From the NCBI GenBank assembly GCA_964187785.1, contig OZ076420.1, forward strand, positions 27,342,001 to 27,406,000: a stretch of DNA of 64,000 nt, read 5' to 3'. The notes beneath the pieces were generated by a model. It ran no database searches. It worked only from the letters and a program-made list of their open reading frames with translations, and was not told the origin of the DNA. Positions within the stretch are counted from its first letter, which is position 1, and each line of letters opens with the position of its first letter. Shown piece by piece: positions 2,291 through 31,480 of this stretch. Origin of the DNA: Amphiscolops sp. MND2022. Its lineage: Eukaryota. Position numbers and translations under genes: made by a program.

Positions 2291-2299
2291 AATCCCTAC

Positions 2300-8479: not shown

Positions 8480-11400
8480 TCGACCTGGTTATATGTTGCC
8501 ATTTACTCAATACTTGTTGGACGAGGAACACGTAAGTTAGTTTTTATCAAGTACAATTCCCAGATGTTTGACGTATTCGGTACAAGTTATTTCAGTCTTT
8601 TTTTGTACTAAGTTGTCATCTTTCTAGTTTAGCAAATGAACCAGTTCAGTTTTAGGAATGATTTGACTGAGTTTATTCACAGCCATCCATTCAGGATAAT
8701 GTTCAACTTCATCTTCCGATGCAGGTGTTTCATTTTTGTTTCTCAACCTAAAGACAGTTAGCGTCATTAGCGAAGAAAAACAGAACAATGTTTTTACATG
8801 AGTTCGTGGAATCCTTGACATAAATTTAAAAAAAAGCACGCGACAGTCACTAAGTAATGGCTTTCAGACTTATTCCAAACAGACCCCTCTGACCCCATGA
8901 GCTTCAAATTTGTACAGAAGATACACGTGGTTTATTGTATCAAAGGTTTTTTGTAAAAATACAAGAATTATTAATTATTAAATACAAGAATTACAGTAAA
9001 TTTGTAACTAAGTGTTTCCGTAATATCCGAGAGCGTGAACGGAGCTGAGTTTTGAACTGAATCCAAAGTGTCATGAGTAGAATAGTTTCTTTTTATTCAA
9101 GAAAGTATACAATCGCTCATATATAACACATTCCAAAACTTGCCTAATACTACACAAAACAGATATGGGTCTGTAAATTTCAGGTATAGTTTTCCTGGCA
9201 GAGTTGTAAATTGGTACCACTATCGCAGCTTATAAAGCCCGAGGGAATGTTCCACTTTTTAGCGACTCATTAACAAGTTAAATTAGATTTCAACTACGGT
9301 ATTAGGACTCACTTCTAGTATTCCTGCAGTCAACTCATCTTCCTGCAGTCAACTCATCGATCAAGTGAATTATGGTTCTTCACATGTTTATATTCCTCGA
9401 AAATTCTCTGCAATCAACTGGGTAGAAAAATATTGTTTTTTCCTTAACTTCAAAACCGTTATTTGCGAATGGGTCATTTTCAATTGACGCTGTTAAGACC
9501 TTACTGATGAAAACAAACTTTTCATTGAACGGCCACATCAATGTCATCCGTAATCAATTCATTTTTATCGTTCGTGTTGATGCAATTGGAATTACTTTCA
9601 ACGATTGGTTTTGATCGGTTCTTCGTTTTTTCTTAGGTTCTATTGATAGGTTCTGTTAGGTTCTTATTGATAAGTCTACCCAAACGTGAAACACAGTATT
9701 CGCGTTTGCCTTTTCTAAGCTGTTGGTGCAAAGTATTGCTGGCTCTTGTATAGCGTAGTTTGTTCTTATGGGTTTTACAGCACTTATACTTCTGCAATGT
9801 TTAACTCTTGCGAATTGAGGCTCTTTAAAATCACTTTGTGAACCAAGGTCTCACAGCATCTAGGGGTTTCGATAGTTTTTCTACAGTGAAAGCAATTTCT
9901 GCTTCCGATATTGCACTGGCAAAAGTTTCAGTAGACATGTTAATGTTCTGACCAAAGTCTGGAAGAGTTTGCAATGGTTCAAGGATATTAGATAGAGATT
10001 ACTGGCATTACTGTCTCGGAGAAACAGGCTATCCTTAACAAAATGTTGAGAACGAATGGATTGTAAATTTTTTATATTCAATTCAACGTAAGTTGCAAAA
10101 TGGCCTGTAATATACGTCTTGATAACTCCAACTTCCAGAGGTCTTTGGTGGACATTGTGGATTATATGATCGATTGGGAATTCTGAGTCCTGCGTCACAC
10201 GTGTTGGTTCTGCGATTCCGTGACTGCAACTATGATTTTCTAACAAGTTGAGATACATGTTTGCTACAGCACTGCAATGCAAGAGGACAATATTAAGATC
10301 GCTGATAAATGGTAGTTCTTAATTTTACTAAAAGATTCAAGAAGTTACTCGAACTGGTCCAAAAAGATCCTGTTTATATGCGGAAGTTGAGATGTATAAA
10401 CACTTGCCGGTGTACTTTTCGTTGTCCGTTGTGGTTCAGTTTACTCCAGTGAGATCAATTTGGGAATAGAATATATTTGTATGCGATGCTCCAACAGATC
10501 AGAGTTCAGCGATTCATGAACATACATTGTGACAGTTCTAGTTGGACCAGGTTTGAATTCCAAAAGCGCATAGGATTCTAATTAGTCCGCACTCTTGGTC
10601 GAGGATTCAGTGTTCCATGTTTAGGAACCGCAAAGACTAGACGCTTTATTTTCACAAAAGGTATCTATTAGCATATCTAGTTCCTCAAAAAGTTAGTCGA
10701 TAGACCTTACGTTCAAACAAAAACTAAATTCGGTCCTAACCTTTTTTACTTTTAGGTTCTTCGATTTTTAGCTTTCAGGGTGTAAACTAGATAGTCCCTA
10801 TCTAAAATGCAAACTGCTTTTGCAAACCGAGTAAACAAAATCTGGATCTCATTCACACAACTTAGAGAGGTTATCAAATACAATTTTGTTTTTGCTTGAT
10901 AGAACACAATTGTTTCATTGATCTTATTGACAAAAGTTACACCTTAACGTTGTCGCCAAGTATTAGCAATCCTGGCTCTCGAAAAAATTAGGTCGTCATT
11001 AGCGTAGGTTCGATTTTCACATTTTTTGAGTTTTGACTTGTTAGGCATCAGCACAAATTTTGTTTGCCTCCGTACAAACATTGCAACGATTGGACGCCCT
11101 TGACTAGGTTTCACACTACTGCTGGGCACTCTGTGACAGATCTTGATGTCCGCTCTTGATACTCTACTCCATGCTTTTTTGCCACATTGAACACCGTTTG
11201 ATAGACATCCTCATTGTCTTCGTCCTGTACCCCAAATATTCGTACATTGTCCCGTTTTCCTTACTGTTGGTTTGAGTCTGCATTAAATAAACTCGACTAT
11301 TCTCCACTGAACTCAGGCTGTTCAACACTTTTTGAATGTTTTGATTGCTACTTGGCCACCTCAACTGCTGCACATAAGTCACACGAAAAAGAGCACGTAA

Positions 11401-11850
11401 TAAAACTCTTCGGAATCTTTTAGCGAAGCCAGGTAGGAACCCGTGAGATGCATCCATCGCCAGTTTGCCCTTTTCCCGTACACTCAATCAAATTGGTGGT
11501 GGAACCAGTTTTCTTCATCAGGTTGAACCAGTTCAGGTATTAGGCATTGCTTCTAAACTATTTCATGAGTGTATCAAAGCAATTAGGCTAATGAAGTAGA
11601 AATGATTTGTTGATTTCAATCGTGTACTTTCCTCGAAAAACATTGTCGTCGTAGAAGCTCTAGATTCATATGAACGAGATTTTTCAATGTCGATCTGAAG
11701 ATGGGTTTCTTGCTTGAGCCCAGCTCTCCGTTTTTTCCTTTTCCGCAGCAGAACGTCTTATAACTGAAACAACAAGGTGACACGCATTAACTTGCATTTT
11801 AGGAGCCGAGTTTGGTAATTTGACTCGGGTTATGATCATTTGGTTTTTGT
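8480..11850 (-). mobile_element. Degenerate CR1/L2-like LINE: ORF1 (RRM type), APE and RT, apparently 3' truncated
   Basis: Minus-strand ORF1 has RDNVRIFGVQDEDNEDVY and ICHRVPS..RPIVAMFVRRQTK..YANDDL. APE has ISDLNI and PTRVTQDSEFPIDHII..TYITGHF. RT has AIVVPIY..YRPISVLCSIRQVLECVIYERLY and VKHLGIVLDKN (~8520-8580). Boundaries are approximate. Confidence 0.8.
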
Positions 11851-11949
11851 GGATTGAAAGTTTTTGAATTTTTCAAAATCTTGGTTGTTCGGAGAGAATG
11901 TAGCAGTACCAAAAGTCACCGTTCCTTCTCCGTCACTGTATTTGCATAC

Positions 11950-14900
11950 TAGAGGGCATTGTTAGAATTACCTATCGGTCGAATACTGGATAGACACTTT
12001 CGTCTCTTTTGTTGGGTTTTTATCTCTCTCGGAAGATTTTGTCCGATAGGAATAAATCTTTTGAAATTCTTATAGCTTCTATTAGCACTATGAATTGTCC
12101 ATGTGAGGTTATGACAAAACCATATATCCCGATTAGTCACAGGTTGAAAAGTCAAGGATATGTCATTGCCACCAAAAACTAAAATTGGCTGTTCTTCAAA
12201 ATTATTTTCCGGGTAACCCAAATGAGAAACATATTATCCACGTTGAAGTCCATTTTGTTACTTTCGGCCCAAAAAGACAATTAGGAGTGGTCCCACAGTG
12301 GAAGGTTTCCTTCTAAAACCTAGTTTTGGTTGACACAGCTGGGGTTCAGTGATTTTGTACAGTCTGGTATAGAGGAGTGGTTCAGAGAGAATGCAAAGTT
12401 TACTAAGATTTGCAAATCAGTCGGTAGTTTTCGATAATGAGTTTGCTCTTTCTTCATGCATGGGCTTCTACAAATTGTTTGAATTCGCAGAGGGAAATGC
12501 ATGAGATAACAGTTAGTAGCTTCCTCGAGCTACGTTTCTCGCTTTTACTATAAGAGCTGAGGAATTGCATGAAGATAGAAAAAAGTTAAAGTCGCCTATT
12601 AAAAGTTCCCAATCCTCTAACCAACAACGTTTGGTTTTGTTTCCGTCTATAAAATTCATCAGTATTTCAAGTTGTATTCTGTATTTACTGTCCGACGGTT
12701 GATTGTAAATAACTATAAGCAGAACATCATTGATGATAACTCAGCAGCCAAAATTGTATTCTTTTGAGGCAGATGTTTCAATTCTGTTCCAGCATTTAGT
12801 CCAAACATAGCAGTTGCTCCATGTATATCAGTGTTTCTATCGCTGTGACAAATTTGCTGAAAGATATTTTAGAGATAATCAAAATAAATTTCAATGTGCG
12901 CAACATGCTTCCGAATTATGACTTCTTAAGCACAGAAAAGAATACCTGCGCAGTTCTGTCTACCCATACATAACAAAAGCACTGAAACTTATATATTGCA
13001 ATAAAATCTGAAGCCGACGGTCTTCTGCCGTCATTTGTTTCGAAACACACAAGCCAGTTGTGTGTTTCCGGGTATTTGCCTATTAGCCCCAAGATCAACA
13101 ATTCTTTCAAGTAAGGAAGTGACGATGTTGTTCTTCATCCGATAGCTTCTTTGCAAGTGCCGAGGTCCGTATAGGCCAGAACTTTTCTTGAACGCACTTC
13201 AATTGTCAGCCGATCTGCTCTACATTTGATGTTCAATCTTTTAAAGTACATTCAATTTTACAGTGTCAAACACAATTAGGTTTAATATAGAAAAAGCAAA
13301 GGATTAAAGTTTAGCTGTCGCGCGTTTTTGTTCGTTTTTAGTTTAAGGGAATAGTCTCCGCGATTGTTGTCTAATAATTGCTCAATTTGGAGCTTGAACT
13401 GTCATCACAGGCGGCATCCTGTACAGCAACATCGTTGGTTTCAAAATTTGAACTGTATCTTGGAGAAACCGACATAGCTACAAGACTTAAAATTGCCCCA
13501 ATAGGATGAATGAACTTTGAAACTTCCTGACAAAATTCAATTGCAATGGGAAAATTAATTCGGATGGAAGTGTGCGTAAGAGATTTGAAAGACATTATAA
13601 AAGTTTCTGGCAATTTTCAAGTGCGTGCAATAAGCCCAGGCAATTCCTACAAAGTAAATTTTTTGACAGAGATGTTGATGAAAATTAAAAAGACCACCAA
13701 CGGTGAGCTCAAATGGGTTTTAGAGTTTTTGAATTTTAAAGTAGATTTTAGTGCCTAAATTGCCAGCATCAGTTTCTAATCAATCCGAATTTGATCGTTT
13801 CCGAGATTTTGGAGACTTGGTTCTATTACATTTTGCAGTTTCATGTTTTCAAGCCAAACAGGACTCGCTCGAAACATTTTTCACAAACAGGAGTCCGGAG
13901 CATACATCCCACTACTGAACAACTCTAACACTGTTATCGTCAATTTTTATGAGTCTGGTTTTGGCTTCAGAACAATTTAATGAAATACAAAAAACAGTAA
14001 TTTGGAAACCAAAAACAAAAGCTATGGAAAAAGTGCAAAAGGTTCCGTTCCCTTCAAATCATTGTTTTCGAACGCCTGAAAAAGACACAAAAACAGTGGT
14101 AACCAATTTTAAATCATTCGAAGACAAGCTTGCTTATTCAAAGGGTTGATTGCTCTTTTTGTGATAGTTAGAATAAACATTACCCTGTCAAAAGTTTTAG
14201 GGAAGTGAAAGCAAAAAGTGACAATTTTCTCTCCAATGTCGAGTGCTTCAAAAACGCTACTTAGATGAAAAAGGAGTTGTATTACAGTGGAATGTTTCCT
14301 TCGAAAAGCATGTTGTGTTCATTTCAGCAGTGGTTCAATGAATTTGTACAGTTTGGAATAAAGGAGATGTTCAGAGCAAAGACAAAGTTTACTAAGATTT
14401 GCAACTCGGCCTGTAGTTTTCGATCATAATTTTGCTCTTTCTTTATGTAATGGCTTTTATCAATTTATTCATATTCGCAAAGGATACTACATGAGATGAT
14501 AGTTTTCTGAAAAGATTCAATAGTGAATTGATAGTGAGTTTGCAGTGGATTTGTTATTAGAGCCTTGAATGTTATCGGGACCAGAGACAGAGCTACAATT
14601 TGACTGTACATGTCAGACATCCTCCACTGTGAAGTCCAGCTAATTACAGACTGCCTTTGAGAAATCTAGAACCTTGGAATCATTTTAATGACTAACGAAC
14701 TGAGAAAAAAATCGACGGAAATCAGCTTTTTGACTATCACCAGTATCAGGATGATCATTGAACTTCATCGTAGAGGTATCTCTCTAAAGACTCTTGAGGG
14801 TTGCAATGAATTTGAAGTGAATTGTGTTTTCGTTATAGGAGCGAATTGAATCGTTTCAAGGTAGATGAAAAGATTTGAATAAATCGTTCAAAGAGATCTT

Positions 14901-17900
14901 AAAAGAGAAAGAAACTCCTCGATACAATTAAATTGCCATAAGGAATTTATTTTGGATGGAAGTGAGAGTAAGAGTTTGGAAAAACTTTATAAAAGTTTCT
15001 GGCAAATTTTAAGTGCATGCAATATGACCAGGCCTTTTCAACAAGGGTAAATATTGGACTGAAATGTTGATGGAAAGTAAATAGACTATCACCAGTGTGC
15101 TCTAACTTGTTTGAGATTTTCTAGTGGGTAACCAGGATAATGAAATGTAATTTTTGAAGTAAGTTTCAGTACTAAATTGCCAGCATCAGTTTTCATAAAA
15201 TCAATATGTGATTTTTTTGGGGTTTTTGAAACTTGGTTAAATCACTACTTGCAGTTTTTTGTTTTCGAGCCAAAGATCACTCGTTTATATCATCTTTCAC
15301 ATACAGGAGTCCGGAGCGCACATTCAATCACTTTACAACTCTAACACTGTTATATTCAATTATTAAACGTATGGCTTCCGTTTCAAAATAATTTAAGGAA
15401 ACGAAACAATTGTACTTCGAAAGCAATACCAAAAGCTATAGAAAAAGTGCAAAATTAACCGCTCCCTCAAATCGTTGTTTTTGAACGGCTGAAAAAGGCA
15501 CAATAAAAGTGGTAACCAATTTTAAATTATTCAGAGACAAGCCTGCTCAGTTAAAGGATTTATTGCTCACTTTGTAAGAAGTAGAATAAAATTCACTCCG
15601 TCAAAGATTTTAGAAAAGTGAAAGAATAAAGTGACAATTTACTCTCCAATGTCGAGTGCTTCAAAAACGCTTAGATGAAGAAGGAGTTGTGTTACAGTGG
15701 AATGTTTCCTTCGAAAACCATGTTTTGTGCAACTCAGCAGTGGTTCAATGAATTTGTACAGTTTGGAATAAAGGAGATGTTCAGAGCGAAGACAAAGTTT
15801 ACTAAGATTTGCAACTCGGCCTGTAGTTTTCGATCATAATTTTGCTCTTTCTTTATGTAATGGCTTTTATTTATTTATTCAAATTCGCAAAGGATACTAC
15901 ATGAGATAATAGTTTTCAGAAAAGATTCAATAGTGAATTGATAGTGAGTTTGCAGTGGATTTGTTATTAGAGCCTCGAATGTTATCAGGACCAGAGACAG
16001 AGCTACAATTCGGCTGTACATGTCAGACTTCCTCCACTGTAAAGTCCAGCTAATTACAGACTGCCTTTGAGAAATCTAGAACCTTTGAATCATTTTATTG
16101 ACTAACGAACTGAGAAAAAAATCGACGGAAATCAGCTTTTTGACTATCACCAGTATCAGGATGATCATTGAACTTCATCGTAGAAGTATCTCTCTGAAGA
16201 CTATTGGGGGTTGCAACGAATTTGAAGTGAATTGTGTTTTCGTTATATGAGCGATTTGAATCGTTTCTAGGTAGATGAAAAGATTTGAATCAATCGTTTA
16301 AAGAGATATCAAAAGAGACAGAAACTCCTCGATACAATTAAATTGCAATAAGGAATTTATTTTGGATGGAAGTGAGAGTAAGAGTTTGGAAAATTTTCAT
16401 AAAAGTTTCTGGCAAATTTTAAGTGCATGCAATATGACCAGGCCTTTTCAACAAGGGTAAATATTGGACTGAAATGTTGATGGAAACTAAATAGACTATC
16501 ACCAGTGTGCTCTAACTTGTTTGGGATTTTCTAGTGGGTAACCAGAATAATGAAATAAAAATTTTGAAGTAGATTTCAGTACTAAAACTGCCAGCATCAG
16601 TTTTCATTAAGTCAATATATGATTTGTTTCAGGTTTTTGAAACTTGGTTAAATCACTACTTGCAGTTTTTTGCTTTCGAGCCAAATATCATTCGTTTAAA
16701 TCATCTTTCACATACAGGAGTCCGGAGCGTACATTCCATTACTTTACAACTCTAACACTGTTATATTCCATTATTAAAAGTATGACTTCCGTTTCAAAAT
16801 AAGTTAAGGAACCGAAACAATTGTACTTCGAAAAGCAATACCAAAAGCTATAGAAAAAGTGCAAAATTAACCGCTCCCTCAAATCGTTGTTTTTGAACGG
16901 CTGAAAAAGGCACAATAAAAGTGGTAACCAATTTTAAATTATTCAGAGACAAGCCTGCTCAGTTAAAGGATTTATTGCTCACTTTGTAAGAAGTAGAATA
17001 AAATTCACTCCGTCAAAGATTTTAGAGAAGTGAAAGAATAATGTGACAATTTTTTCTCCAATGTCGAGTGCTTCAAAAACGCTTAGATGAAGAAGGAGTT
17101 GTGTTACAGTGGAATGTTTCCTTCGAAAACCATGTTTTGTGCAACTCAGCAGTGGTTCAATGAATTTGTACAGTTTGGAATAAAGGAGATGTTCAGAGCG
17201 AAGACAAAGTTTACTAAGATTTGCAACTCGGCCTGTAGTTTTCGATCATAATTTTGCTCTTTCTTTATGTAATGGCTTTTATCAATTTATTCATATCGCA
17301 AAGGAAACTACATGAGATAATAGTTTTCTGAAAAGATTCAATAGTGAATTGATATTGAGTTTGCAGTGAATTTGTTATTAGAGCCTTGAATGTTATCAGG
17401 ACCAGAGACAGAGCTACAATTTGACTGTACATGTCAGACATCCTCCAGTGTGAAGTCCAGCTAATTACAGACTGTCTTTGAGAAATCTAGAACCTTGGAA
17501 TCCTTTTAATGACTAACGAACTGAGAAAAAAAATCGACGGAAGTCTGCTTTTTGACTATCACCAGCATCAGGATGATCATTGAACTTCATCGTAGAGGTA
17601 TCTCTCTGAAGACTCTTGAGGGTTGCAATGACTTTGAAGTGAATGTTGTTTTCGTTATATGAGCGAATTGAATCGTTTCTAGGTAGATGAAAAGATTTGA
17701 ATCAATCGTTTAAAGAGATCTTAAGAGAGAAAGAAACTCCTCCATACAATTATATTGCAATAAGGAATTCATTTTGGATGGAAGTGAGAGTAAGAGTTTG
17801 GAAAATCTTTATAAAAGTTTTGGCAAATTTCAAGTGCATGCAATAAGACCAGGCCTTTTCAACAAGGGTAATCATTGGACTGAAATGTTGATGGAAAGTA

Positions 17901-20900
17901 AATAGACTATCACCAGTGTGCTCTAACTTGTTTGAGATTTTTTAGTGGGTAACCAGAATAATGAAAAGTAAATTTTGAAGTAGTTTCCAGTACTAAAATT
18001 GACAGCATCAGTTTTCAATAAATCAATATGTGATTTTTTTGAGGTTTTTGAGTTTTGGTTAAATCACTACTCGCAGTTTTTTGCTTTCGAGCCAAATATC
18101 ATTCGTTTAAATCATCTTTCACATACAGGAGTCCGGAGCGTACATTCCATTACTTTACAACTCTAACACTGTTATATTCCATTATTAAAAGTATGACTTC
18201 CGTTTCAAAATAAGTTAAGGAAACGAAACAATTGTACTTCGAAAAGCAATACCAAAAGCTATAGAAAAAGTGCAAAATGTACCGCTCCCTTCAAATCATT
18301 GTTTTTGAACGCCTGAAAAAGACACAATAAAAGTGGTAACCAATTTTAAATTATTCAGAGACAAGCCTGCTCAGTTAAAGGATTTATTGCTCACTTTGTA
18401 ATAAATAGAATAAAATTCACTCTGTCAAAGTTTTTAGAGAAGTGAAAGAATAAAGTGACAATTTACTCTCCAATGTCGAGTGCTTCAAAAACGCTTAGAT
18501 GAAGAAGGAGTTGTGTTACAGTGGAATGTTAACTTCGAAAACATGTCAGACATCCTCCACGGTGAAGTCCAGCTAATTACAGACTGCATTTGAGATATCT
18601 ATAAACCTCATAAACCATGTTTTGTGCAACTCAGCAGTGGTTCAATGAACTTGTACAATTTGGAATAAAGGAGATGTTCAGAGCAAAGACAAAGTTTACT
18701 AAGATTTGCAACTCGGCCTGTAGTTTTCGATCAAAATTTTGCTCTTTCTTTATGTAATGGCTTTTATCAATTTATTCATATTCGCAAAGGAAACTACATG
18801 AGATAATAGTTTTCTGAAAAGATTCAATAGTGAATTGATATTGAGTTTGCAGTGGATTTGTTATTAGAGCCTTGAATGTTATCAGGACCAGAGACAGAGC
18901 TACAATTTGACTGTACATGTCAGACATCCTCCACTGTGAAGTCCAGCTAATTACAGACTGCATTTGAGAAATCTAGAATCTTGGAATCATTTTAATGGCT
19001 AACGAACTGAGAAAAAAATCGACGGAAATCTGCTTTTTGACTATCACCAGTATCAAGATGATCATTGAACTTCATCGTAGAGGTATCTCTCTGAAGACTC
19101 TTGAGGGTTGCAATGAATTTGAAGTGAATGTTGTTTTCGTTATATGAGCGAATTGAATCGTTTCTAGGTAGATGAAAAGATTTGAATCAATCGTTTAAAG
19201 AGATATCAAAAGAGACAGAAACTCCTCGATACAATTAAATTGCAATAAGGAATTTATTTTGGATGGAAGTGAGAGTAAGAGTTTGGAAAATCTTCATAAA
19301 AGTTTCTGGCAAAATTCAAGTGCATGCAATATGACCAGGCCTTTTCAACAAGGGGAAACAAGGGACTGAGATGTTGATGGAAAGTAAATAGACTATCACC
19401 AGTGTGCACTAACTTGTTTGAGATTTTTTAGTGGGTAACCAGAACAATGAAATGTAAATTTTGAAGTAGGTTTCAGTACTAAAAGTGCCAGCATCAGTTT
19501 TCATTAAATCAAAATGTGATTTTTCTGAGGTTTTTGAAACTTGGTTATATCACTACTTGCAGTTTTTTGTTTTCGAGCCAAATATCACTCGTTTAAATCA
19601 TCTTTCACATACAGGAGTCCGGAGCGTACATTCCATTACTTTACAACTCTAACACTGTTATAATCCATTATTAAAAGTATTGCTTCCGTTTCAAAATAAT
19701 TTAAGGAAACGAAACAATTGTACTTCGAAAAGCAATACCAAAAGCTATAGAAAAAGTGCAAAATGTACCGCTCCCTTCAAATCGTTGGTTTTGAACGCCT
19801 GAAAAAGACACAATAAAAGCGGTAACCAATTTTAAATTATTCAGAGACAAGCCTGCTCAGTTAAAGGATTTATTGCTCACTTTGTAAGAAGTAGAATAAA
19901 ATTCACTCTGTCAAAGATTTTAGAGAAGTGAAAGAATCGAGTGACAATTTACTCTCCAATGTCGAGTGCTTCAAAAACGCTTAGATGAAGAAGGAGTTGT
20001 GTTACAGTGGAATGTTTCCTTCGAAAACCATGTTTTGTGCAACTCAGCAGTGGTTCAATGAATTTGTACAGTTTGGAATGAAGGAAATGTTCAGAGCAAA
20101 GACAAAGTTTACTAAGATTTGCAACTCGGCCTGTAGTTTTTGATCATAATTTTGCTCTTTCTTTATATAATGGCTTTTATCAATTTATTCATATTCGCAA
20201 AGGAAACTACATGAGATAATAGTTTTCTGAAAAGATTCAATAGTGAAATGATATTTTGAGTTTGGAGTGGATTTGTTATTAGAGCCTTGAATATTATCAG
20301 GACCAGAGACAGATCTACAATTTGACTGTACATGTCAGACATACTGTGATGTCCAGCTAATTACAGACTGCATTTGAGAAATCTAGAACCTTGGAATCTT
20401 TTTAATGACTAATGAACTGAGAAAAAAATCGACGGAAATCTGCTTTTTGACTATCACCACTATCAGGATTATCATTGAACTTCATCGTAGAAGTATCTCT
20501 CTGAAGACTATTGGGGGTTGCAACGAATTTGAAGTGAATTGTGTTTTCGTTATATGAGCGAATTGAATCGTTTCTAGGTAGATGAAAAGATTTGAATCAA
20601 TCGTTTAAAGAGATATCAAAAGAGACAGAAACTCCTCGATACAATTAAATTGCAATAAGGAATTTATTTTGGATGGAAGTGAGAGTAAGAGTTTGGAAAA
20701 TCTTCATAAAAGTTTCTGGCAAATTTCAAGTGCATGCAATATGACCAGGCCTTTTCAACAAGGGGGAACAATGGACTGAGATGTTGATGGAAAGTAAATA
20801 GACTGTCACCAGTGTGCTCTAACTTGTTTGAGATTTTTTAGTGGGTAACCTGAACAATGAAATGTAAATTTTGAAGTAGATTTCAGTACTAAAATTGACC

Positions 20901-23900
20901 GCATCAGTTTTCATTAAATCAAAATGTGCTTTTTTGAGCTTTTTGAAACTTGGTTAAATCACTACTTGCAGTTTTTTGTTTTCGAGCCAAATATCACTCG
21001 TTTAAATCATCTTTCACATACAGGAGTCCGGAGCGTACATTCCATTACTTTACAACTCTAACACTGTTATAATCCATTATTAAAAGTATTGCTTCCGTTT
21101 CAAAATAATTTAAGGAAACGAAACAATTGTACTTCGAAAAGCAATACCAAAAGCTATAGAAAAAGTGCAAAATGTACCGCTCCCTTCAAATCGTTGGTTT
21201 TGAACGCCTGAAAAAGACACAATAAAAGCGGTAACCAATTTTAAATTATTCAGAGACAAGCCTGCTCAGTTAAAGGATTTATTGCTCACTTTGTAAGAAG
21301 TAGAATAAAATTCACTCTGTCAAAGATTTTAGAGAAGTGAAAGAATCGAGTGACAATTTACTCTCCAATGTCGAGTGCTTCAAAAACGCTTAGATGAAGA
21401 AGGAGTTGTGTTACAGTGGAATGTTTCCTTCGAAAACCATGTTTTGTGCAACTCAGCAGTGGTTCAATGAATTTGTACAGTTTGGAATGAAGGAAATGTT
21501 CAGAGCAAAGACAAAGTTTACTAAGATTTGCAACTCGGCCTGTAGTTTTTGATCATAATTTTGCTCTTTCTTTATGTAATGGCTTTTATCAATTTATTCA
21601 TATTCGCAAAGGAAACTACATGAGATAATAGTTTTCTGAAAAGATTCAATAGTGAAATGATATTTTGAGTTTGGAGTGGATTTGTTATTAGAGCCTTGAA
21701 TATTATCAGGACCAGAGACAGAACTACAATTTGACTGTACATGTCAGACATACTGTGATGTCCAGCTAATTACAGACTGCATTTGAGAAATCTAGAACCT
21801 TGGAATCTTTTTAATGACTAATGAACTGAGAAAAAAATCGACGGAAATCTGCTTTTTGACTATCACCACTATCAGGATTATCATTGAACTTCATCGTAGA
21901 AGTATCTCTCTGAAGACTATTGGGGGTTGCAACGAATTTGAAGTGAATTGTGTTTTCGTTATATGAGCGATTTGAATCGTTTCTAGGTAGATGAAAAGAT
22001 TTGAATCAATCGTTTAAAGAGATATCAAAAGAGACAGAAACTCCTCGATACAATTAAATTGCAATAAGGAATTTATTTTGGATGGAAGTGAGAGTAAGAG
22101 TTTGGAAAATCTTCATAAAAGTTTCTGGCAAATTTCAAGTGCATGCAATATGACCAGGCCTTTTCAACAAGGGGGAACAATGGACTGAGATGTTGATGGA
22201 AAGTAAATAGACTGTCACCAGTGTGCTCTAACTTGTTTGAGATTTTTTAGTGGGTAACCTGAACAATGAAATGTAAATTTTGAAGTAGATTTCAGTACTA
22301 AAATTGACCGCATCAGTTTTCATTAAATCAAAATGTGCTTTTTTGAGCTTTTTGAAACTTGGTTAAATCACTACTTGCAGTTTTTTGTTTTCGAGCCAAA
22401 TATCACTCGTTTAAATCATCTTTCACATACAGGAGTCCGGAGCGTACATTCCATTATTTTACAACTCTAACACTGTTATAATCCATTATTAAAAGTATGG
22501 CTTCCGTTTCAAAATAATTTAAGGAAACGAAACAATTGTACTTCAAAAAGCAAAACCAAAAGCTATAGAAAAAGTGCAAAATGTACCGCTCCCTTCAAAT
22601 CGTTGTTTTTGAACGCCTGAAAAAGACACAATAAAAGTGGTAACGAATTTTAAATTATTCAGAGACAAGCCTGCTCAGTTAAAGGATTTATTGCTCACTT
22701 TGTAATAAGTAGAAAAAAATTCACTCTGTCAAAGATTTTAGAGAAGTCTAAGTGTAAAAATAAAATTTTCTCTCCAATGTTGAGTGCTTCAAAAACGCTT
22801 AGAAGGAGTTGTCTCACAGTGGAAAATTTCCTTCGAAAACCATGTTCTGTTTAAGTCTGCTGTGGTTCAATGATTTTGTAAAGTTTGGAATAGAGGAGAT
22901 GTTCCAAGGCAAAGTTTACTAAAATTTGCAAATCGGTCCGTACTTTTCGATAATGAGTTTGGTCTTTCTTTGGGAAACGCCTTTTTTAAATTTATTTCCG
23001 TTCGCAGGGTAAATTGCATGAGATAACCGTTTGTCTGACAAAATTCAAAAAGTGAGTTGATAAAGAGTTTGCAGTGCACTCGATATTCGAGCTTGGAATG
23101 CTATCAGGACCATAGCCAGGGCTACGTTTCGGCATTACATGTGAGACATCGTCCACTCTGAAATCCAGGTAATTATAGACTGCATTTGAATAATTTAATC
23201 TCTAAGAATCATTTTAATGACTTACAAACTGAGACAAAAAAATTCGACGAAAGGCTTCTGCTATCTGACTATCACCAAAATCAGGATGATCATTGAATTT
23301 AATCGTAGAGGGAAATTTCTGATGACTGTAGAGGGATGCAAAGAATTTTAAGTGATTAGGTTTTCCGTTATACGAGAGAACTGAATCGTATCTAGGTAAA
23401 TGAAAAGATCTAAATCAATAGTTTGAATGCGATTTTTTCTCAATCTTAAATAACGGAAACTGACTGTGTCGATTTTGTTGTTGACTGTTTCAAAACAGTT
23501 GAGTAGTTGAACTGCATGTGACGAATATTATTTTGGTAGAAGTTTTCTCGAGCTACGATTCTAGTTTTTACTATAAAAACTGAAGAATTCCATGAAGATA
23601 AAAAACAAGTTAAAGTCGCCTATTAGATAATTCTCAATCCTCTAACAACAATGTTTGGTTTTGTTTTCGTCTATAAATTTGATCAGTGTTTCATGTTTTA
23701 TTCTGGATTTACTGCCCGACGGTTGATTGTAAATAACTTTAAGCTGCATATCATTGATGATAACCCAGCAGCCAAAGTTGTATTTTTTGAGGAGAATGTT
23801 TCAATTCCGTTCCAGCATTTAGTCCAAACATAGCAGTTGCTCTATGTAAACCGGTGTTTCGAGCTATGTAAACCAGTGTTTCGGGATAATCAAAATAAAT

Positions 23901-26900
23901 TTCAATGTGCGCAACATGCTTCCGAATTATGACATTTTAAGCACAGAAAAGAATACCTATCTTGTTGTCTACCCATACCTTACAAAAGCACTGAAACGTA
24001 CGTATTGCACAAAATGTAAAGCCGTACTCGTGTTTCTGCCATCATTTGTTTTGAAACACACAAGGCAGCTGTGTGTTACCGGGTATTTGTTTATTGGCTC
24101 AAGATCAAAAAAACTTTCCAATAGTTAGGTGGCGATGTTTTTCTTCATCCGATAGGTTCTTTGCAAGTGCTGAGGTCCGTATAATGCAGAAAAATACTTG
24201 AACGCGATTCAGTTGTCAACCAATCCGCTCTACATTTGATTTCCAATGTTCCAAAGTACATTCAATTCTCAGTGTCAAATACAAATAGGTTTAAAATGAA
24301 AAAAGCAAAAGTTTTATATTGTAGCCGTCGCTCATTTGTATTCATTCTTTAGGTTAAAGAAATAGTCTTCGTGATCGATGTCTGATAATTGTACATTTCG
24401 GATCTTAAATTGACATCACAGACGGCATCCTGGCAGCAATTTAGTTGGTTTCAAAATTAGAACTGTATATTGAAGAAACCGACATAGCTACAAGACTTAA
24501 AATTGCCCCAATAGGTTGAATAAACTTTAAAATTTCCTGACAAAAATCAATTGCAACTGGAAAGTTAGTTCGGATGGAAGTGTGCGTAAGAGATTGGAAA
24601 GACATTATAAAAGTTTCTGACAATTTTCAAGTGCCTGCAAACAACCCAGGCATTTTCAACAAGGTAAATATTTTGACAGAGATGTTGATGAAAATTGAAT
24701 AGACTACCACCAGTGAGCTCAAACTGGTTTGAGATTTTTTAGTTGGTGATTAGAATAATGAAATGTAAAGTTTGAAGTAGATTTCAGTGCTAAAATTGCA
24801 GCATCAGTTTAATATCAATCCATATGTGATATTTCTTCGAGATTTTGGAAAGTTGGTCAAATCACATTTTGCAGTTTCTTATTTTCGAGCCAAATGGGAC
24901 TCGTTCAGATCGTTTTTCACACACAGGAGTCCAGAGCCGATATTCCCTTACTTAACAACTCTAACACTGTTATCGTCAGTTTTTAATTGTCTGGCCTCAG
25001 TTTCAAAACGATTTAATGAATTGCGAAAAACAGTAATTCGGAACCAATACCAAGAACTATCGAAAATGTGCAAATTGTACCGTTCCCTTCAAATCGTTGT
25101 TTTTGAACGCCTGAAAAAGACACAATGAAAGTGGTTACGAATTTTATATTATTCAGACACAAGCCTGCTCAGTTAAAGGATTTTTTGCTCACTTTGTAAG
25201 AAGTAGAATGAAATTCACTCTGTTAAAGGTTTTAGAGAAGTGAAAGAATAAAGTGACAATTTACTCTCCAATGTCGAGTGCTTCAAAAACGCTTAGATGA
25301 AGAAGGAGTTGTGTTACAGTGGAATGTTTCCTTCGAAAACCATTTTTTGTGCAACTCAGCAGTGGTTCAATGAATTTGTACAATTTGGAATAAAGGAGAT
25401 AATCAGAGCAAAGACAAAGTTTACTAAGATTTGCAACTCGGCCTGTAGTTTTAGATCATGATTTTGCTGTTTCTTTATGTAATAGCTTTTATCAGTTTAT
25501 TTATATTCGCAAAGGAAACTAAGTGAGATAATAGTTTTTTTGAAAAGATTCAAAAGTGAATTGATAATGAGTTTGCAGCGGATTTGTTATTAGAGCCTTG
25601 AATGTTCTCAGGACCAGAGCCAGAGTTTCAATTTGACTGTACATGTCAGACATCCTCCACTGTGAAATCCAGGTGATTACCGACTGCATTTGAGAAATCT
25701 AAACACCTTGGAACCATTTTTATGACTAACGAACTGAGAAGAGAAAAATTGACGGAGTTCTTCTGCTTTTTGACTATCACCAGTATCAGGATGATCATTG
25801 AACTTCATCGTAGAGGGATATTTCTGATGACTGGAAGGATGCAAAGAATTTGAAGTTATTAGGGTTTGTGTTGTACGAGAGAATTGAAGCGTATCTGGTA
25901 GGTAGATGAGAAGATCTAAGGCAATCGTTTAAAAGAGATCTTTTCTCTACCTTAAAAACCGGAAACTGACTGTGTTGATGTTGTTGTTGACTGTTTCAAA
26001 GCGGTTGAGTAGTTGAACAGCATGTGACGAACATTAATTTGGTAGTAGCTTTCTTCTCGCTTTTGCTATTAGAGCTGAGGAATTCCATGAAGATAGAAAA
26101 CTAGTTGAAGTCGCCTATTAGAATTTTCTCAATCCTCTAACCAAGAATGTTTGTTTTAGTTATCGTATATAAAGTTCATCAGTATTTCATGTTTTATTCT
26201 GGGTTTACTGCCCGACGGTTGATTGTAAATAACTATAAGCTGGATATCATTGATGATGATAACCCAGCAGCCAAAATTGTAATCTTTTGAGGCAGATGTT
26301 CCAATTCTAGCATTTAGTCCAAACATAGCAGTTGCGCAATGTATGCCATCGTGTTTCGATCGCTGTGACAAATTTGCTGAAGGATATTTTTGGGATAATC
26401 TAAATAAATTTCAAAGTGCGCAAGATGCTTCCGGTTTATAACATTTCGAACACAGAAAAAATATCCATCCAGTTGTCTGCCCATACATAACAAAAGCACT
26501 GAAACGTATGTATTGCACAAAATATAAAGCCTACTCGGCCTTTTGCCATCCTTTTTTTGGAACACACAAGCCAGTTGTGTGTTCCCGGGTATTTGTTCAT
26601 TAGCCCAAGATCAATAAATCTTTCAAACAAAGAAGTGACGATTTTGATCTTCATCCGATAGCTTCTTTGCAAGTGCCGAGGTCCGTATAAGGCAGAAAAA
26701 TACTTGAACGCAATTCAGTTGTCAACAAGTCCGCTCTACATTTGATTTCCAATGTTCCAAAGTACATTCAATTCTCAGTGTCAAATACAAATAGGTTTAA
26801 AATAAAATAAGCAAAAGTTTTTTATTTTAGCCGTCGCTGATTTGTATTCATTCTTTAGGTTAAAGGTATAGTCTTCGTGATTGATGTCTGATAATTGCAC

Positions 26901-27640
26901 AATTTGGACCTTAAATTCACATCACAGACGGCGTCCTAGACAGCAACTTAGTTGGTTTCAAAATTTGAACTGTATCTTGAAGAACCCAACATAGCTACAA
27001 GACTTAAAATTGCCCCAATAGGATGAATGAACTTTGAAACTTCCTCACAAAAATCAATTGCAACTGGAAAATTAATTCGGATGGAAGTGTGCGTAGACGT
27101 TGGCGAGACATTAAAAAAGTTTCTAGCAATTTTCAAGTGCGTGCAAAAACCCCAGGCATTTTCAACAAGGTAAATATTTCGACTGAGATGTTGGTGATAA
27201 GTAAATAGACTACATCCAGTGGGCTCAATTTTATTTTTTTGAGAGTTAGTTTTTGGTGGGTGATTTGAATATTGAAATGTTAATTTTAAAGCATTCATCC
27301 CATGCTATTCTCGCCAGCATCATATTCTTGTCAATCTAAATTGGATTGTGTGCGAGATTTTGGAAATTTCGTTTGATCACATTTTGCAGTTTGTTGTTTT
27401 TAAGTCCAATAGGACTCGTTCGAAACATTTTTCACAGACAGGAGTCGGGAACATATACCCCGCCACTACTGTACCACTATAACAAAGTTACATTTCATTT
27501 AGTCTGCCTGACATTTCAGAAGTATCTAGTGAAACGAAAAAAATAGTTCGAAAATCAAAACCAAAAGCTTTGCAAAAAGAAAAAAAGGTACGGTTTCCTT
27601 CAGATCATTGTTTTTCAACGCTTAGAAAAGACACTATTAA
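11950..27640 (-). repeat. LINE-derived macrosatellite: six ~1.41-kb units flanked by ~2.5-kb units, composed of APE/RT fragments of two CR1-like LINEs
   Basis: The anchor ctccaatgt(c/t)gag occurs at 14231, 15644, 17056, 18468, 19954, 21363, 22772 and 25266 (periods 1413, 1412, 1412, 1486, 1409, 1409, 2494). Minus-strand translations: LIVIYNQPS..LLIGDFNF (APE, ~12580-12730 and homologues at ~23.7 and ~26.2 kb); KRSPGYGPDSIP; KHGFRRKHSTVTQLL..EALDIGE*IVTLFFHFSKIFD; and a second RT with FINISV..LFAGT*KL, a frameshifted LFADDLK. Confidence 0.9.
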
Positions 27641-28439
27641 ACATGTCACAGCCCAACAGCTGTGTGGGAACCGGTGAGCAGCCTTGAAAAGTAAACGGAA
27701 ATTGAAGATAATTCATAATTTGAAACTATATTTGTGACAGTTTTTTTTGTTCTCATTCTTTTTGCTTATGTCACGTAAATATATTGTTTGTGATGATATT
27801 GTCAATTGTGATGTAATTTCTCTCATAAATGGTTTAATAAGACCTAGATTTCATCAGAATTTCGACTTTTGTACTCTTTAATCAACTTAATGAATAATGT
27901 TGTCTAGATATGATGACTTATTATGCTATTTTGCGATTGATTGTGCTGACAATTGTACGGCAACATACATTCAATGAAATTGTGACTATACGTCAACATG
28001 CGTTTCTAGTTAATATGTATAATCGGGATTATGCAGTTTTCCGCATAAGTGCTTGTATACGGTAACCTACGTTTAGCTACATAACGAATTAACGTCGTTG
28101 TACATTTTTAGATTGGTTCGATTTGAATTAATAACAAAGTATACTGAAAGATGACGTCAGCGACATCGCTCTTACATTGATGTATACATTTTTCCATGGC
28201 TTTACAAGCTCTAGTGTCATGTTTTGATTGTAATTTCTTAGGAATTCTGAAATATAAACAGGCTAACGCAATGATGCCGTGATTTTATTTACATCTTTTT
28301 GAATGATGACACTCTTAAAAAAGATGATCATGTTTTCATTGCCAAAAGCCAGTTTAGTCTGTACCCCTTTTTTATAATTCAAACCAAACTTCAAACAATT
28401 CAGTCGTTTTGAAAGATACTTTTTCAATTGCTTTGTGAA

Positions 28440-29089
28440 TCTTTTAATTTTTTTTCTCTGAATAAACTTTGTTTTCATCAATCAATTGTGGAGAATTCAA
28501 CTTTTTCCCCTCCACAAACCTCATTTTCACTTGCGCAATGTTGGGAAATAAGAGAAATAGACGGTCTAGAAGACTATCTCCAGAGAGGGAGATGAACAAT
28601 ACTCAGATCGAAGTACCTAATGCAGGTAATGAGACTTTAACTAATTCTAATGTTAATGTTCAAGTAAGTTTAGGTTTAGCTCAGGAAATCAACTAACTGA
28701 ACCAATCTGAACAGTTATGAAATACAAGTTTGGACCCAAATGTTTGAACAAAAAAGTAACGACATATTACGAAAATGAGAAAAATGGATAACCAATTGGA
28801 TACTATTCTAAAGGAAATTAGACCCAAACAAAGCGCATCACCAGTCACAAACCCTAGGTTCGAAACACTAGAATCCCGAAACAATAAAATTCGCGATCCA
28901 AGGTGTATAAGTCTCTAGGAGTTCACTCATCAATTACTGAAAATTAGGACTCAGAAGACGAGGATTATCCTCTCAGACCCTCTGGCATTAGAGATTTGAG
29001 ACATCCTGCTATTCCTTTGTATAGAAATTGGTTAGATTTAGACGCAACAGTAGTTTCAAATGAGGACTCAGCGAAGGAGGATTATCACA
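28440..29089 (+). mobile_element. LTR-like repeat copy 1 (probable solo LTR, 5' end uncertain, possibly ~28215), with a disrupted MGNKR.RRSRRL ORF
   Basis: Homologous to 30590-31214 over ~600 bp, and both copies stop at the identical boundary gaggattatcaca. No matching TSD was found for this copy. Confidence 0.5.
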
Positions 29090-29101
29090 AAGTGGCAACC
29101 A

Positions 29102-29691
29102 TTTTTAGTCGGCCCTTAATGAAATGAAACGCGACTATTATAGTGACTCCTTTGTTCAACCCATACGAACTTACCAAAAAAGTTCTACAAAATCTCTACA
29201 AAATTTTATGGTCCCAAATTGAATCTATTCGCCCAGCAAACTGAATCAAAGAAGTTTCTCCTCTTTTTCCGCGTAGCATACCGTACCGGGAGAGACTGAA
29301 GAGTCCCCCCTTTTCGGCATTGTGAGACTTTTGTATCGAAAAACAATTTTGTTCCCAAAGGGTCCCTCCTTCAATTTTTTGATGTTTTGCTACTAAATGG
29401 ATGTTGAAAAATCCCAAAGGGCCCCCTTTAAATTTTTTTCGGCATTGTGAGATTTTTTTCGGATTTTTTTTCACCAAATTTTTTTCTCCCTTCAATTTTT
29501 TGATGTTTTGTAACAATGGATGTTAAAAAATGCGAATGGGTCCTTCTTTTAGCACGTGCTAGCGGACACCTGGCGTGCCAGTTCCGTCGTTTGGGCTTTT
29601 CGTGAGTTTGATACTTTGAGTTTTTTGACACTTTCATGTCCTTTTGCTATTTTTGAGCCTTAGATATGGCGCTGACTTATGCCATACCCGG
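29102..29691 (+). mobile_element. HINE/DINE-1-like non-autonomous repeat (family A, copy 1)
   Basis: The 5' end has a tagtcgg..aaacgcgacta hairpin, the interior has repeated ttcaattttttgatgttttg..gggtcc modules, and the 3' end reads gagccttagatatggcgc. Near-identical organisation occurs at 60321-60802, with partial copies at 43779-44560 (-) and 44908-45356 (+). Confidence 0.5.
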
Positions 29692-30246
29692 TGTCGCATC
29701 CATCAAGATGCGATGGTTCCGTGGTGCAACTTTGAAGAGGAACGAACGATAGACTCATTTCAACAAACTCTCTAAAACTCTGATGAACCCGTTTTATATG
29801 ATGTCTTAAAACTCAAAGTTGTTTAGTTTCGAAAGTCATGTAAATATGATATTTGTAATATGGTTGTTGTGAATGGACCTTCATCATAGTGCTAACATAC
29901 CTTCATTGCTTCATTGGGAACCCTTGTTTTAATCATACAACGAGTTATCTCATTGTCTAATCATATATTCTAAAGGTCCTAATGCGTCTAAATTCGTCAT
30001 CAGATAGTAATTTACTTCTTAGCATAGTACAATTATGCGGAACTATGCGGATCGAAGTGTGACGTATACTCGTCATTATGCGTTTTTACTAGTATCATTA
30101 TGCGGCATTATACGTTTCAAGGTGTTACGAGTATGCGGCATTATACGTTTTCCATAAAAACATTATACGGCATCCTGCGGGACTAGTAGTGACGCATACT
30201 CGTCATTATGCGTTTCTCGCAGGACTTGTTAAATAACCCCAGCACG

Positions 30247-31214
30247 TGTCATAATGTTATCTAAAAGCCAATTCAACTACAATTGAAGGCCATTTTAAGA
30301 GATTCCCAGGGTTCATTAGTTTCTTTTCCCAATCATACTTTTATGATGTCATGTAAATGTGCTATTTTACAATATAACGTCATTGGACGTAATTCTATTT
30401 TTGTCTTGATTTCATACAATGACTCCCGTAAAAAGGAGTGTCATGTTTTTTGGATATTTTGTTCTGAGTTTTCAATCAGGGGGATTCATTAAGAATCCAA
30501 TCCTCATCAAGTGCAGTTACTTTCTCAAATAACTGTAAAACTTCGATTTCGCCTCTGTAAAAATTCAGCTTTGCTTCTCTTTTGGGATACAAGACTAATT
30601 CAAATTCTTCCCCAAAAGCCAGAAAACATTTTCACTTGAGAGTAACATGGGAAATAAAAGAAGCCGAAGGTCTAGAAGACTTGAGACACCGTCCCCAGAC
30701 AGAGAAGTGGAGGTAACACAGATAGAAACCCCTAAAACAGGTAATGAAGCTTTAATTGATCTTAGTAATGTTGCCCAAGGAAATTTAGGTGAAAATAGCT
30801 CTGAAAACCAGTTAACCGAACCTAGTCAAATGAGCAATGAGATGCAAGTTTGGACCCAAATCATGGAACAAAAGAACAACGATAGGATTGAAAAGATGGG
30901 AGAAGAAATGGAAAACAAACTTGAAGCGATTCTAAAGGAAATAAAGTCAAATAAGAGTGCATCCACAGTAACTAATCCTAGGTCGGATATAAACGAAATG
31001 CGAGAAAGTCAACCTTCGGGATCCAAACTGAGTAAATCTATAGGAGTTCCTGCATCTAATAACGAAAACTCTGATTCCGAGAACGACGACTATCCTCTTA
31101 GAGCATCTAAAATGAAGGACTTGAAACATCCTGCTAAACCCTTCTTTGAAACTGAAACAGACTTAGACCAAATAGAGCTTTCAAATGAAGAGTCTGAACA
31201 AGAGGATTATCACA
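30247..31214 (+). mobile_element. LTR-like repeat copy 2 (probable solo LTR, 968 bp) containing 189 codons of an open ORF (30647 onward)
   Basis: Termini tgtcataat...attatcaca form a TG..CA pair with an 8/9-nt inverted repeat. Flanks are cacg and cccg (3/4 match, possible 4-bp TSD). It shares its exact 3' boundary with copy 1. Confidence 0.6.
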
Positions 31215-31230
31215 CCCGGGTTGTTAACTC

Positions 31231-31480
31231 ATTCATAGGCAAGCCTGCTCAGTTAAAGGATTGATCGCTCACAGAAAAGTCATCAATCAAAATGGTGAGT
31301 TATCAACTGTACAAAGCATATTACTTCTCAACAACGTGTTGCGTGTGTTTTTTATAGGAGAAAAGGGTCATCGTGTTCGTTTTCGGCACTATAGACTCCA
31401 CATTTTTCTGGTCAACAAAGACCTGAATTTTGAAAAAAATTCATTGATTCGCGAAACGATAAACAAGTGGGAGTCGTTTG
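31231..31480 (-). mobile_element. Probable 3'-terminal fragment of a LINE including the 3' UTR motif gtgagcgatcaaatcctttaactgagcaggcttgcctatgaat
   Basis: Minus-strand remnant VPKTNTMTLFSYKKHTQHVVEK*YAL weakly resembles the CR1 C-terminus. The ~40-bp motif is shared with every unit of the 12-27 kb array. Confidence 0.35.

What the first reader, a model, noticed from the sequence alone, without database searches (positions are those of the whole stretch)
11950..27640. A ~15.7-kb macrosatellite built from a chimera of two fossil LINE reverse-transcriptase genes
Seen: what looks like anonymous satellite DNA translates on the minus strand into CR1-type ORF2. Each unit holds LINE-a pieces (APE in the long units: LIVIYNQP..LIGDFNF; pre-RT FPSTIKFND..AEAF; PGYGPDSIP; HGFRRKHSTVTQLL; FSKIFD.V..LLLTK). 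These are abruptly joined to a second, more diverged LINE-b RT that restarts at domain 1 and runs past a frameshifted LFADDLK, so RT domains 1-3 occur twice per unit. At the left edge (11950-12330) LINE-a continues into its own 3' RT region, marking a likely founding locus. Established: TE-derived satellites exist, but they usually come from LTRs, MITEs or Helitrons. Inference: a dead LINE/LINE junction became an amplifying kilobase-scale satellite, and it could serve as heterochromatin or as an antisense small-RNA source against CR1 elements.
Basis: partly seen in the sequence, partly recalled or inferred. Interest (0 to 1): 0.75.

Follow-up and report, generated by a model that had tools for sequence, protein, structure and literature searches.

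The report
Local tandem array with one LINE fragment
This is a single-locus tandem array of about nine and a half kilobase-sized units, made by repeatedly duplicating one dead LINE retrotransposon fragment together with its neighbouring DNA; it is not a fusion of two reverse-transcriptase genes, and it looks like ordinary neutral duplication.

Summary
The array is real. Window 12270-27641 holds three 2.5-kb units (one partial) flanking six 1.41-kb units, plus a 0.3-kb end piece. It occurs only here in the 1.07-Gb genome.

Each unit carries one minus-strand ORF2 fragment of a dead, dispersed LINE family ("LINE-a"). It runs from the endonuclease to reverse-transcriptase (RT) domain 3.

The claimed second RT ("LINE-b", "LFADDLK") is not there:
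- tBLASTn with five intact ORF2s from this genome finds no second RT.
- Two ORF2 profile HMMs run unfiltered over six frames find none.
- Motif searches and Pfam scans of the open pieces find none.

The "b" half is unique DNA plus the right half of a 550-bp MITE.

The abrupt join after RT domain 3 is the tandem-duplication junction. The unique segment X1 continues at 31224-31272, beyond later transposon insertions. It stops matching the units exactly where they switch to LINE-a, at a shared TGATCGC microhomology.

A single 1.1-kb deletion made the short unit, which then amplified; the newest pair is 99.6% identical. No function is shown. LINE ORF2-derived satellites are already described.

The parts
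11588..12270 (-). LINE-a 3' RT and C-terminal ORF2 region lying outside the array. It is the continuation of the ancestral LINE-a copy. Homology to all dispersed copies stops at about 11588.
   Evidence: HMM positions 683-901; blastn to L003-L008, L011 and L045 at 69-83%.
12270..13797 (.). Unit L1p, the leftmost long unit, with internal deletions. Relative to dispersed copy L045 it lacks 4417-4864 and 5103-5496. It also lacks segment X1. It is 83-84% identical to L2 and L3.
13798..22338 (.). Six short units, S1-S6, of about 1410 bp, starting at 13798, 15213, 16631, 18035, 19521 and 20930. S4 has a 75-bp insertion. All six share the same 1.1-kb deletion. S1 is 89-90% identical to the other short units, S2-S6 are 95-96% alike, and S5/S6 are 99.6% alike.
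   Evidence: In the tree the short units form one clade (support 100/99).
22339..24831 (.). Long unit L2 (2493 bp).
22339..22697 (.). Segment X1 within L2: about 360 bp of unique, locus-specific DNA. No RT signal.
22698..23862 (-). LINE-a ORF2 fragment within L2. It runs from the N-terminal endonuclease part (about aa 45-152) to RT domain 3 (about aa 583 of an intact 939-aa ORF2), with a deletion of about 360 bp inside the endonuclease. A weak protein-level trace may extend about 100 bp further 5'.
   Evidence: blastn to eight dispersed copies at 69-80%; all alignments end at 22698.. Pfam RVT_1 at 1.6e-22 and Exo_endo_phos_2 at 1.5e-5 on the dispersed relative L002.
23863..24434 (.). Segment X3: unique DNA present only in the three long units.
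   Evidence: only three copies in the genome, all in this array.
24435..24664 (.). Right-hand half of an old copy of a ~550-bp MITE-like element with 32-nt terminal inverted repeats. It ends at the element's terminal ...TTTCAACAAGG.
   Evidence: many dispersed hits. (69-79% identity, mostly 69-72%, to L046-L055). (inverted repeats). (alignment A1).
24665..24831 (.). Segment X2: unique DNA, contiguous with X1 of the next unit.
24832..27336 (.). Long unit L3 (2505 bp), 84% identical to L2.
27337..27641 (.). Terminal partial unit R: X1 up to about unit position 300, then cut off by inserted repeats.
27642..31223 (.). Later insertion of dispersed repeats that splits the last X1. An older family starts at 27644 (66-85% identical to 40 or more copies). 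A young family ends at 31214 (94-96% identical, with over 2000 first-look candidates).
31224..31272 (.). The remainder of X1, which is the ancestral right flank. It is 88% identical to unit positions 312-360. It stops matching the units exactly where they switch to LINE-a. It contains TGATCGC at 31262-31268, which is shared with the LINE-a breakpoint.
   Evidence: E 1.3e-11; alignment; junction sequences.

Best explanation
This is a single-locus tandem segmental amplification, and it is most likely neutral. The proposed history follows.

1. A 5'-truncated copy of an old endonuclease-plus-RT LINE family (LINE-a) sat on the minus strand. Next to it lay unique DNA holding half of a MITE.
2. A 2.5-kb segment was duplicated in tandem. 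It ran from inside the LINE's RT (just after domain 3) to a point about 1.33 kb into the flank. The duplication probably used a 7-bp microhomology (TGATCGC).
3. That event created the 'abrupt join' seen in every unit. Unequal exchange or replication slippage then raised the number of long units.
4. One unit lost 1.1 kb: the endonuclease part, X3 and part of the MITE.
5. This 1.41-kb short form amplified to six copies in the middle of the array. The latest duplication is 99.6% identical.
6. Later, transposons inserted into the rightmost unit.

Shown: the anatomy, the single locus, one LINE per unit, a single origin of all units and of the short form, and the continuation of the flank. Inferred: the duplication mechanism and the lack of function.
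For: Anatomy and identity gradient. Long units are 83-84% alike, S1 is about 90% like the other short units, S2-S6 are 95-96% alike, and S5/S6 are 99.6% alike.

Single locus. X1, X2 and X3 match only C12:27.354-27.370 Mb.

LINE-a identity. Dispersed copies are 69-80% identical. They carry RVT_1 (1.6e-22) and Exo_endo_phos_2 (1.5e-5).

Single origin. All units form one clade against the dispersed copies (support 100/99), and the short units form one nested clade.

One RT trace per unit. It always ends at the same ORF2 position, and nothing is found in X1-X3. The MITE half is shown.

Flank continuation. The match at 31224-31272 ends exactly at the LINE-a junction. It sits directly after a repeat that ends at 31214, while the array breaks off at 27641, directly before a repeat that starts at 27644.

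Microhomology. TGATCGC is present both in the flank and in four dispersed LINE-a copies at the breakpoint.

The left edge keeps the LINE-a 3' RT.

Read support. Short-read contigs from two samples of one study span the S4/S5, S5/S6 and S6/L2 junctions. Their depths are about 1x on the L2-specific kilobase and about 2-7x on short-unit sequence.
Against: - The leftmost unit does not show an uninterrupted LINE-a across the breakpoint. A 394-bp deletion removes that position, so the ancestral state there is inferred from dispersed copies.
- The flank continuation is only 49 bp. About 15-20 bp between 27641 and 31224 are unaccounted for.
- A profile search cannot exclude an RT remnant that is degraded beyond recognition in X1-X3.
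- No expression, small-RNA or chromatin data could be examined, so neutrality is an inference.
- The read runs may come from the same individual as the assembly.
Confidence: 0.8

Rival explanations
1. Each unit is a chimera of two different fossil LINE RT genes: LINE-a up to domain 3, joined to a more diverged LINE-b that restarts at domain 1 and runs past the FADD box.
For: The join after FSKIFD..LLLTK really is abrupt, and all homology to dispersed LINE-a ends at one base. The genome is saturated with LINEs, with over 35,000 RT candidates, so LINE-into-LINE junctions are common.
Against: - No second RT hit in any unit with five intact ORF2 queries at E<0.1.
- None with a 5-sequence ORF2 HMM or a 95-sequence ORF2 HMM, both run with --max at E<=10 over six frames.
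- No FADD-like or LFAD motif in any frame.
- No Pfam hit on the open pieces.
- 230 bp of the 'b' half is a MITE terminus.
- X1 continues into non-LINE flank at 31224-31272.
Confidence: 0.04
2. The array is functional. It could be a small-RNA (piRNA-like) source antisense to LINE-a, a heterochromatin nucleator, or a regulatory macrosatellite kept by selection.
For: All LINE-a fragments share one orientation. The recent amplification (99.6% pair) shows the array is still dynamic. A second, unrelated LINE-RT-containing tandem array lies 18 kb away.
Against: - The LINE-a family is old and dead; its copies are 69-80% identical and full of stops, so there is little left to silence.
- There are only about 9.5 units at one locus.
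- Units decay at the edges as neutral DNA does.
- No Rfam family or tRNA is present.
- No RNA run holds the stretch, though that does not show silence.
Confidence: 0.08
3. An assembly artefact: a falsely expanded or collapsed repeat.
For: S5 and S6 are 99.6% identical, which is the kind of pair an assembler can mis-count.
Against: Contigs from four short-read runs (two samples) cross three unit junctions without mismatch. Summed k-mer depth in short-unit bins is about 2-7 times that of the L2-specific kilobase, in line with the assembled copy number. Graded divergence among the units is not what an artefact produces.
Confidence: 0.04

Closest known systems
Chicken HinfI (SCR1) satellite derived from CR1, listed in the review PMC9659126
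   Same: Tandem repeats whose monomer contains a partial ORF2 of a CR1-type LINE.
   Different: That is a genuine multi-copy satellite. Here there is one locus with about 9.5 units, and more than half of the long unit is non-LINE flank.
L1 ORF2-derived satellites: PROsat of Phodopus roborovskii and Pvc 20 of harbour seal (PMC9659126)
   Same: A LINE ORF2 fragment embedded in tandemly repeated monomers.
   Different: A different LINE clade and host, and abundant arrays. The present array is a local segmental amplification.
Single-locus macrosatellites such as human D4Z4 (from my own knowledge; not tested here)
   Same: Kilobase-sized units in a head-to-tail array at a defined locus, with a retro-derived sequence inside the unit.
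   Different: D4Z4 units keep an open reading frame (DUX4) and a known chromatin role. Here every reading frame is broken and no role is shown.
TE-seeded tandem arrays by double insertion or unequal exchange (McGurk & Barbash 2018, PMC5932611; seen only in the listing, not read)
   Same: Transposon sequence acts as the substrate of a young tandem array that can grow by unequal exchange.
   Different: Here the unit junction joins the flank to the inside of a single LINE copy, with microhomology. It does not join two insertions of the same element.

Membership tests
Endonuclease-type non-LTR retrotransposon (LINE) ORF2 fragment | Reverse-transcriptase domain (Pfam RVT_1) | tested here: met
   The dispersed relative L002 scores RVT_1 at 1.6e-22, 80.7 bits, over the cut-off. 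The array units align to ORF2 HMM positions 368-598 with domain E down to 1.8e-35. The stop-free pieces of the units themselves gave no Pfam hit because they are too short.
Endonuclease-type non-LTR retrotransposon (LINE) ORF2 fragment | N-terminal apurinic-type endonuclease domain | tested here: met
   Exo_endo_phos_2 at 1.5e-5 on L002, which is 25.2 bits and just under the 27.4-bit cut-off. Long units align to ORF2 aa 64-152 of intact elements. LIGDFN and IYNQP are present.
Endonuclease-type non-LTR retrotransposon (LINE) ORF2 fragment | Dispersed family of copies elsewhere in the genome | tested here: met
   Eight or more dispersed copies at 69-80% identity on six other chromosome-scale contigs.
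CR1 clade specifically | RT groups with reference CR1 elements in a phylogeny; 3' end is a short microsatellite rather than poly(A) | tested here: inconclusive
   No labelled reference RTs were available. The protein search returned almost no names. A young family of this genome, 50% identical to LINE-a in the RT, ends in a variable TAC-repeat tail without poly(A). That fits CR1- or L2-like elements but is not decisive. LINE-a's own 3' end is truncated at 11588.
   no hit and no motif.
Satellite DNA or macrosatellite | Head-to-tail tandem units of 1 kb or more | tested here: met
   Units of 1.41 and 2.5 kb, about 9.5 copies.
Satellite DNA or macrosatellite | High copy number, or several arrays in the genome (classical satellite) | tested here: not met
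   Unit-specific segments are found only at this locus. Read depth is 2-7x single copy.
MITE (the 550-bp family that contributes 24435-24664) | Short non-coding element with terminal inverted repeats and many dispersed copies | tested here: met
   32-nt terminal inverted repeats, 78-84% complementary. Ten copies share sharp ends. Target-site duplications were not examined.

The most novel reading that the evidence does not exclude
LINE RT fragments in this LINE-saturated genome may seed kb-scale tandem arrays more often than chance would give. Two unrelated arrays in one 64-kb window both contain RT domains 1-3 on the minus strand. Such arrays might act as antisense small-RNA sources or heterochromatin seeds.
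Probability: 0.06. Interest if true: 0.5.

Novelty: new member of a known kind. Interest (0 to 1): 0.15.

Why it matters
It matters little beyond annotation. The locus is a clean, datable example of how a tandem array is born. The founding junction with its microhomology is still readable. So are both ancestral edges, a single deletion derivative and stepwise amplification. It also corrects a tempting but false reading: no second reverse transcriptase is present. Repeat annotators should mask it as LINE fragment plus MITE plus a local duplication, not as a new satellite family.

Tried and rejected
- TRF found nothing because its period limit is 500.
- Pfam on stop-free pieces of the units gave no RT or endonuclease hits, even for true LINE-a pieces. 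That test alone is too weak, so I relied on read-through HMMs with X at the stops.
- ORF1 proteins of intact LINEs do not match X1-X3, so X3 is not LINE-a upstream sequence.
- tBLASTx of the non-LINE part against the dispersed loci found nothing.
- I first suspected that the 31224-31272 match was merely a shared transposon, because a 205-aa ORF (30647-31264) runs into it. I rejected this: the young repeat family ends at 31214.
- The Atlas search was busy.
- The protein word search gave almost no names, so it did not help with the clade or the organism.
- The first large MAFFT run timed out and was redone with a fast mode.
- Only runs of unknown kind that look like DNA were available, so expression could not be tested.
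Full report
THE ARRAY IS REAL

Direct-repeat search and self-BLAST show a kilobase-unit tandem array. TRF missed it only because its longest period is 500. A multiple alignment of the units gives this map:
- a deleted long unit, L1p, at 12270-13797;
- six short units of about 1410 bp, S1-S6, starting at 13798, 15213, 16631, 18035, 19521 and 20930;
- two full long units, L2 at 22339-24831 and L3 at 24832-27336;
- a 305-bp end piece, R, at 27337-27641.

A short unit is a long unit minus one 1.1-kb block, which corresponds to 23428-24534 of L2.

Identities are graded:
- L1p, L2 and L3 are 83-84% alike.
- S1 is 89-90% like the other short units.
- S2-S6 are 95-96% alike.
- S5 and S6 are 99.6% alike.

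THE ARRAY IS AT ONE LOCUS

The window is C12:27,342,001-27,406,000 of a 1.07-Gb assembly. Whole-genome DNA searches were run with a short unit, with the X2/X1 region and with X3. They return full-unit matches only at this locus. Elsewhere only two sub-segments recur:
- unit positions 360-1100, which have 9 copies at 71-74%;
- unit positions about 1115-1250, which have many short copies.

So this is a local array, not a genome-wide satellite.

LINE-A IS CONFIRMED

The dispersed relatives of positions 360-1100 are broken LINE copies. Their longer open pieces score Pfam RVT_1 at 1.6e-22 and Exo_endo_phos_2 at 1.5e-5.

The genome also holds dozens of intact 939-, 942-, 943- and 957-aa ORF2s. tBLASTn with five of them hits every unit once, on the minus strand. 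The hits cover ORF2 aa about 384-585 in short units. In long units they also cover aa about 64-152 and about 270-360.

At DNA level, LINE-a homology in L2 runs from 23862 down to 22698, with an internal deletion of about 360 bp. It ends at the same base against all eight dispersed copies, although those copies continue.

A maximum-likelihood tree of the LINE-a segment puts all units in one clade against the dispersed copies (support 100/99). The short units form one nested clade, and S5 groups with S6. This indicates one insertion, one deletion event and stepwise amplification.

LINE-B IS NOT THERE

The rest of the long unit is about 1.33 kb. It comprises X1 (360 bp), X3 (about 570 bp), a 230-bp block, and X2 (170 bp). 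It was tested in several ways:
- tBLASTn with five intact ORF2s at E<0.1 gave nothing.
- ORF1 proteins and tBLASTx against LINE loci gave nothing.
- An ORF2 HMM built from five local elements, and a second built from 95 diverse ORF2s, were each run with --max and E<=10 over all six frames with stops as X. Each gave one LINE trace per unit, always ending at RT domain 3. Only noise (E about 6, wrong strand) appeared elsewhere.
- Regular expressions for LFAD, FADD, ADDLK, DDLK and [FYL][AS]DD gave no match in any frame of 11500-28000.
- Pfam on the open pieces gave nothing.

The 230-bp block (24435-24664) is the right-hand half of an old copy of a 550-bp MITE-like family. That family has 32-nt terminal inverted repeats, and the block ends at the element's terminus. 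X1, X2 and X3 have no other copies in the genome.

WHAT THE ABRUPT JOIN IS

The array breaks off at 27641, at unit position about 300 of X1. A dispersed repeat starts at 27644, and a young repeat family ends at 31214. Directly after that, 31224-31272 matches unit positions 312-360 at 88% (E 1.3e-11).

That match ends exactly where the units switch to LINE-a. Beyond it, the sequence at 31273 onward is unrelated. X1 is therefore the ancestral right flank, split by later insertions.

The X1|LINE-a join present in every unit is the tandem-duplication junction. Both parents carry TGATCGC at the breakpoint: the flank at 31262-31268, and four dispersed LINE-a copies. This suggests a microhomology-mediated first duplication, which is an inference.

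On the other side, LINE-a runs on from 12270 to 11588 into its own 3' RT and C-terminal region. One caveat applies. L1p has lost 394 bp that include the breakpoint position, so continuity there is inferred from the dispersed copies.

READ SUPPORT

Four runs from one study (two samples) hold about 70% of the sampled words. Their kind is unrecorded, but their depth pattern looks like DNA.

Their contigs cross the S4/S5, S5/S6 and S6/L2 junctions without mismatch. Depth on the L2-specific kilobase is 17-47. Short-unit bins reach about 2-7 times that. This is consistent with the assembled copy number and not with a large collapse. The sample may be the assembly's own. No RNA run was available, so expression is untested.

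NO RNA GENES

No Rfam family and no tRNA lies in 10000-32500.

COMPARISON WITH WHAT IS KNOWN

Satellites containing LINE ORF2 fragments are already documented, according to the review PMC9659126. Examples are chicken HinfI/SCR1 from CR1, Phodopus PROsat from L1 ORF2 and seal Pvc 20 from L1 ORF2.

The present case is a smaller thing: a locus-specific segmental array in which a LINE fragment is a passenger alongside unique flank and a MITE half.

The clade label "CR1" could not be tested, because no labelled references were available and the protein search gave almost no names. A related young family in this genome ends in a variable TAC-repeat tail without poly(A). That is compatible with CR1- or L2-like elements.

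VERDICT

The array and LINE-a are real; the second RT and a genome-wide satellite are not. The most likely explanation is neutral tandem amplification of one dead LINE fragment plus its flank (confidence 0.8). Interest is low.

Noticed in passing
window 45872-49293: A second, independent tandem array: units of about 1190 bp, about 2.9 copies, 89-99% alike. Each full unit holds an RT domain 1-3 fragment on the minus strand (broad ORF2 HMM positions 534-644, E 8e-11 and 1e-9). It has no DNA or translated similarity to the first array.
   Followed up: partly
L046:811-1358, L049:890-1427 and eight more loci (L047-L055): A ~550-bp MITE-like family with 32-nt terminal inverted repeats (CCCTAGTTGAAG...). 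It has many dispersed copies, 82-100% alike among those fetched.
   Followed up: partly
L038:1297-4938 (G000:C2:43.93 Mb) and more than 50 other places: A very young LINE family. ORF1 (274 aa) is followed by an intact 939-aa ORF2. The copies compared are 99.6-99.8% identical. The 3' UTR is about 90 bp and ends in a variable TAC-repeat tail with no poly(A). Several further families with intact 942-1084-aa ORF2s exist. The genome has over 35,000 first-look RT candidates.
   Followed up: partly
window 30400-31214; genomic copies: A young repeat, 94-96% identical, with over 2000 first-look candidates. Its genomic copies often come in same-strand pairs about 14.5 kb apart, as the terminal repeats of a large LTR-type element would. 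Here it carries a 205-aa ORF (30647-31264) with no Pfam match. An older paralogous piece lies at 28540-29090.
   Followed up: no
window 718-5851 (+), 8870-9295 (-), 37817-38017 (-): Further LINE remnants. A nearly full-length ORF2 lies on the + strand, with ORF1 at 2416-3252, interrupted by the N run at 4924-5123. An RT fragment at 9295-8870 and a small RT piece at about 37.9 kb lie on the minus strand.
   Followed up: no
window 11555-11590: LINE-a's 3' truncation point abuts 36 bp that resemble (86-89%) the region around the ORF1 start of three young LINE families. This may be the 5' end of another LINE fragment.
   Followed up: no
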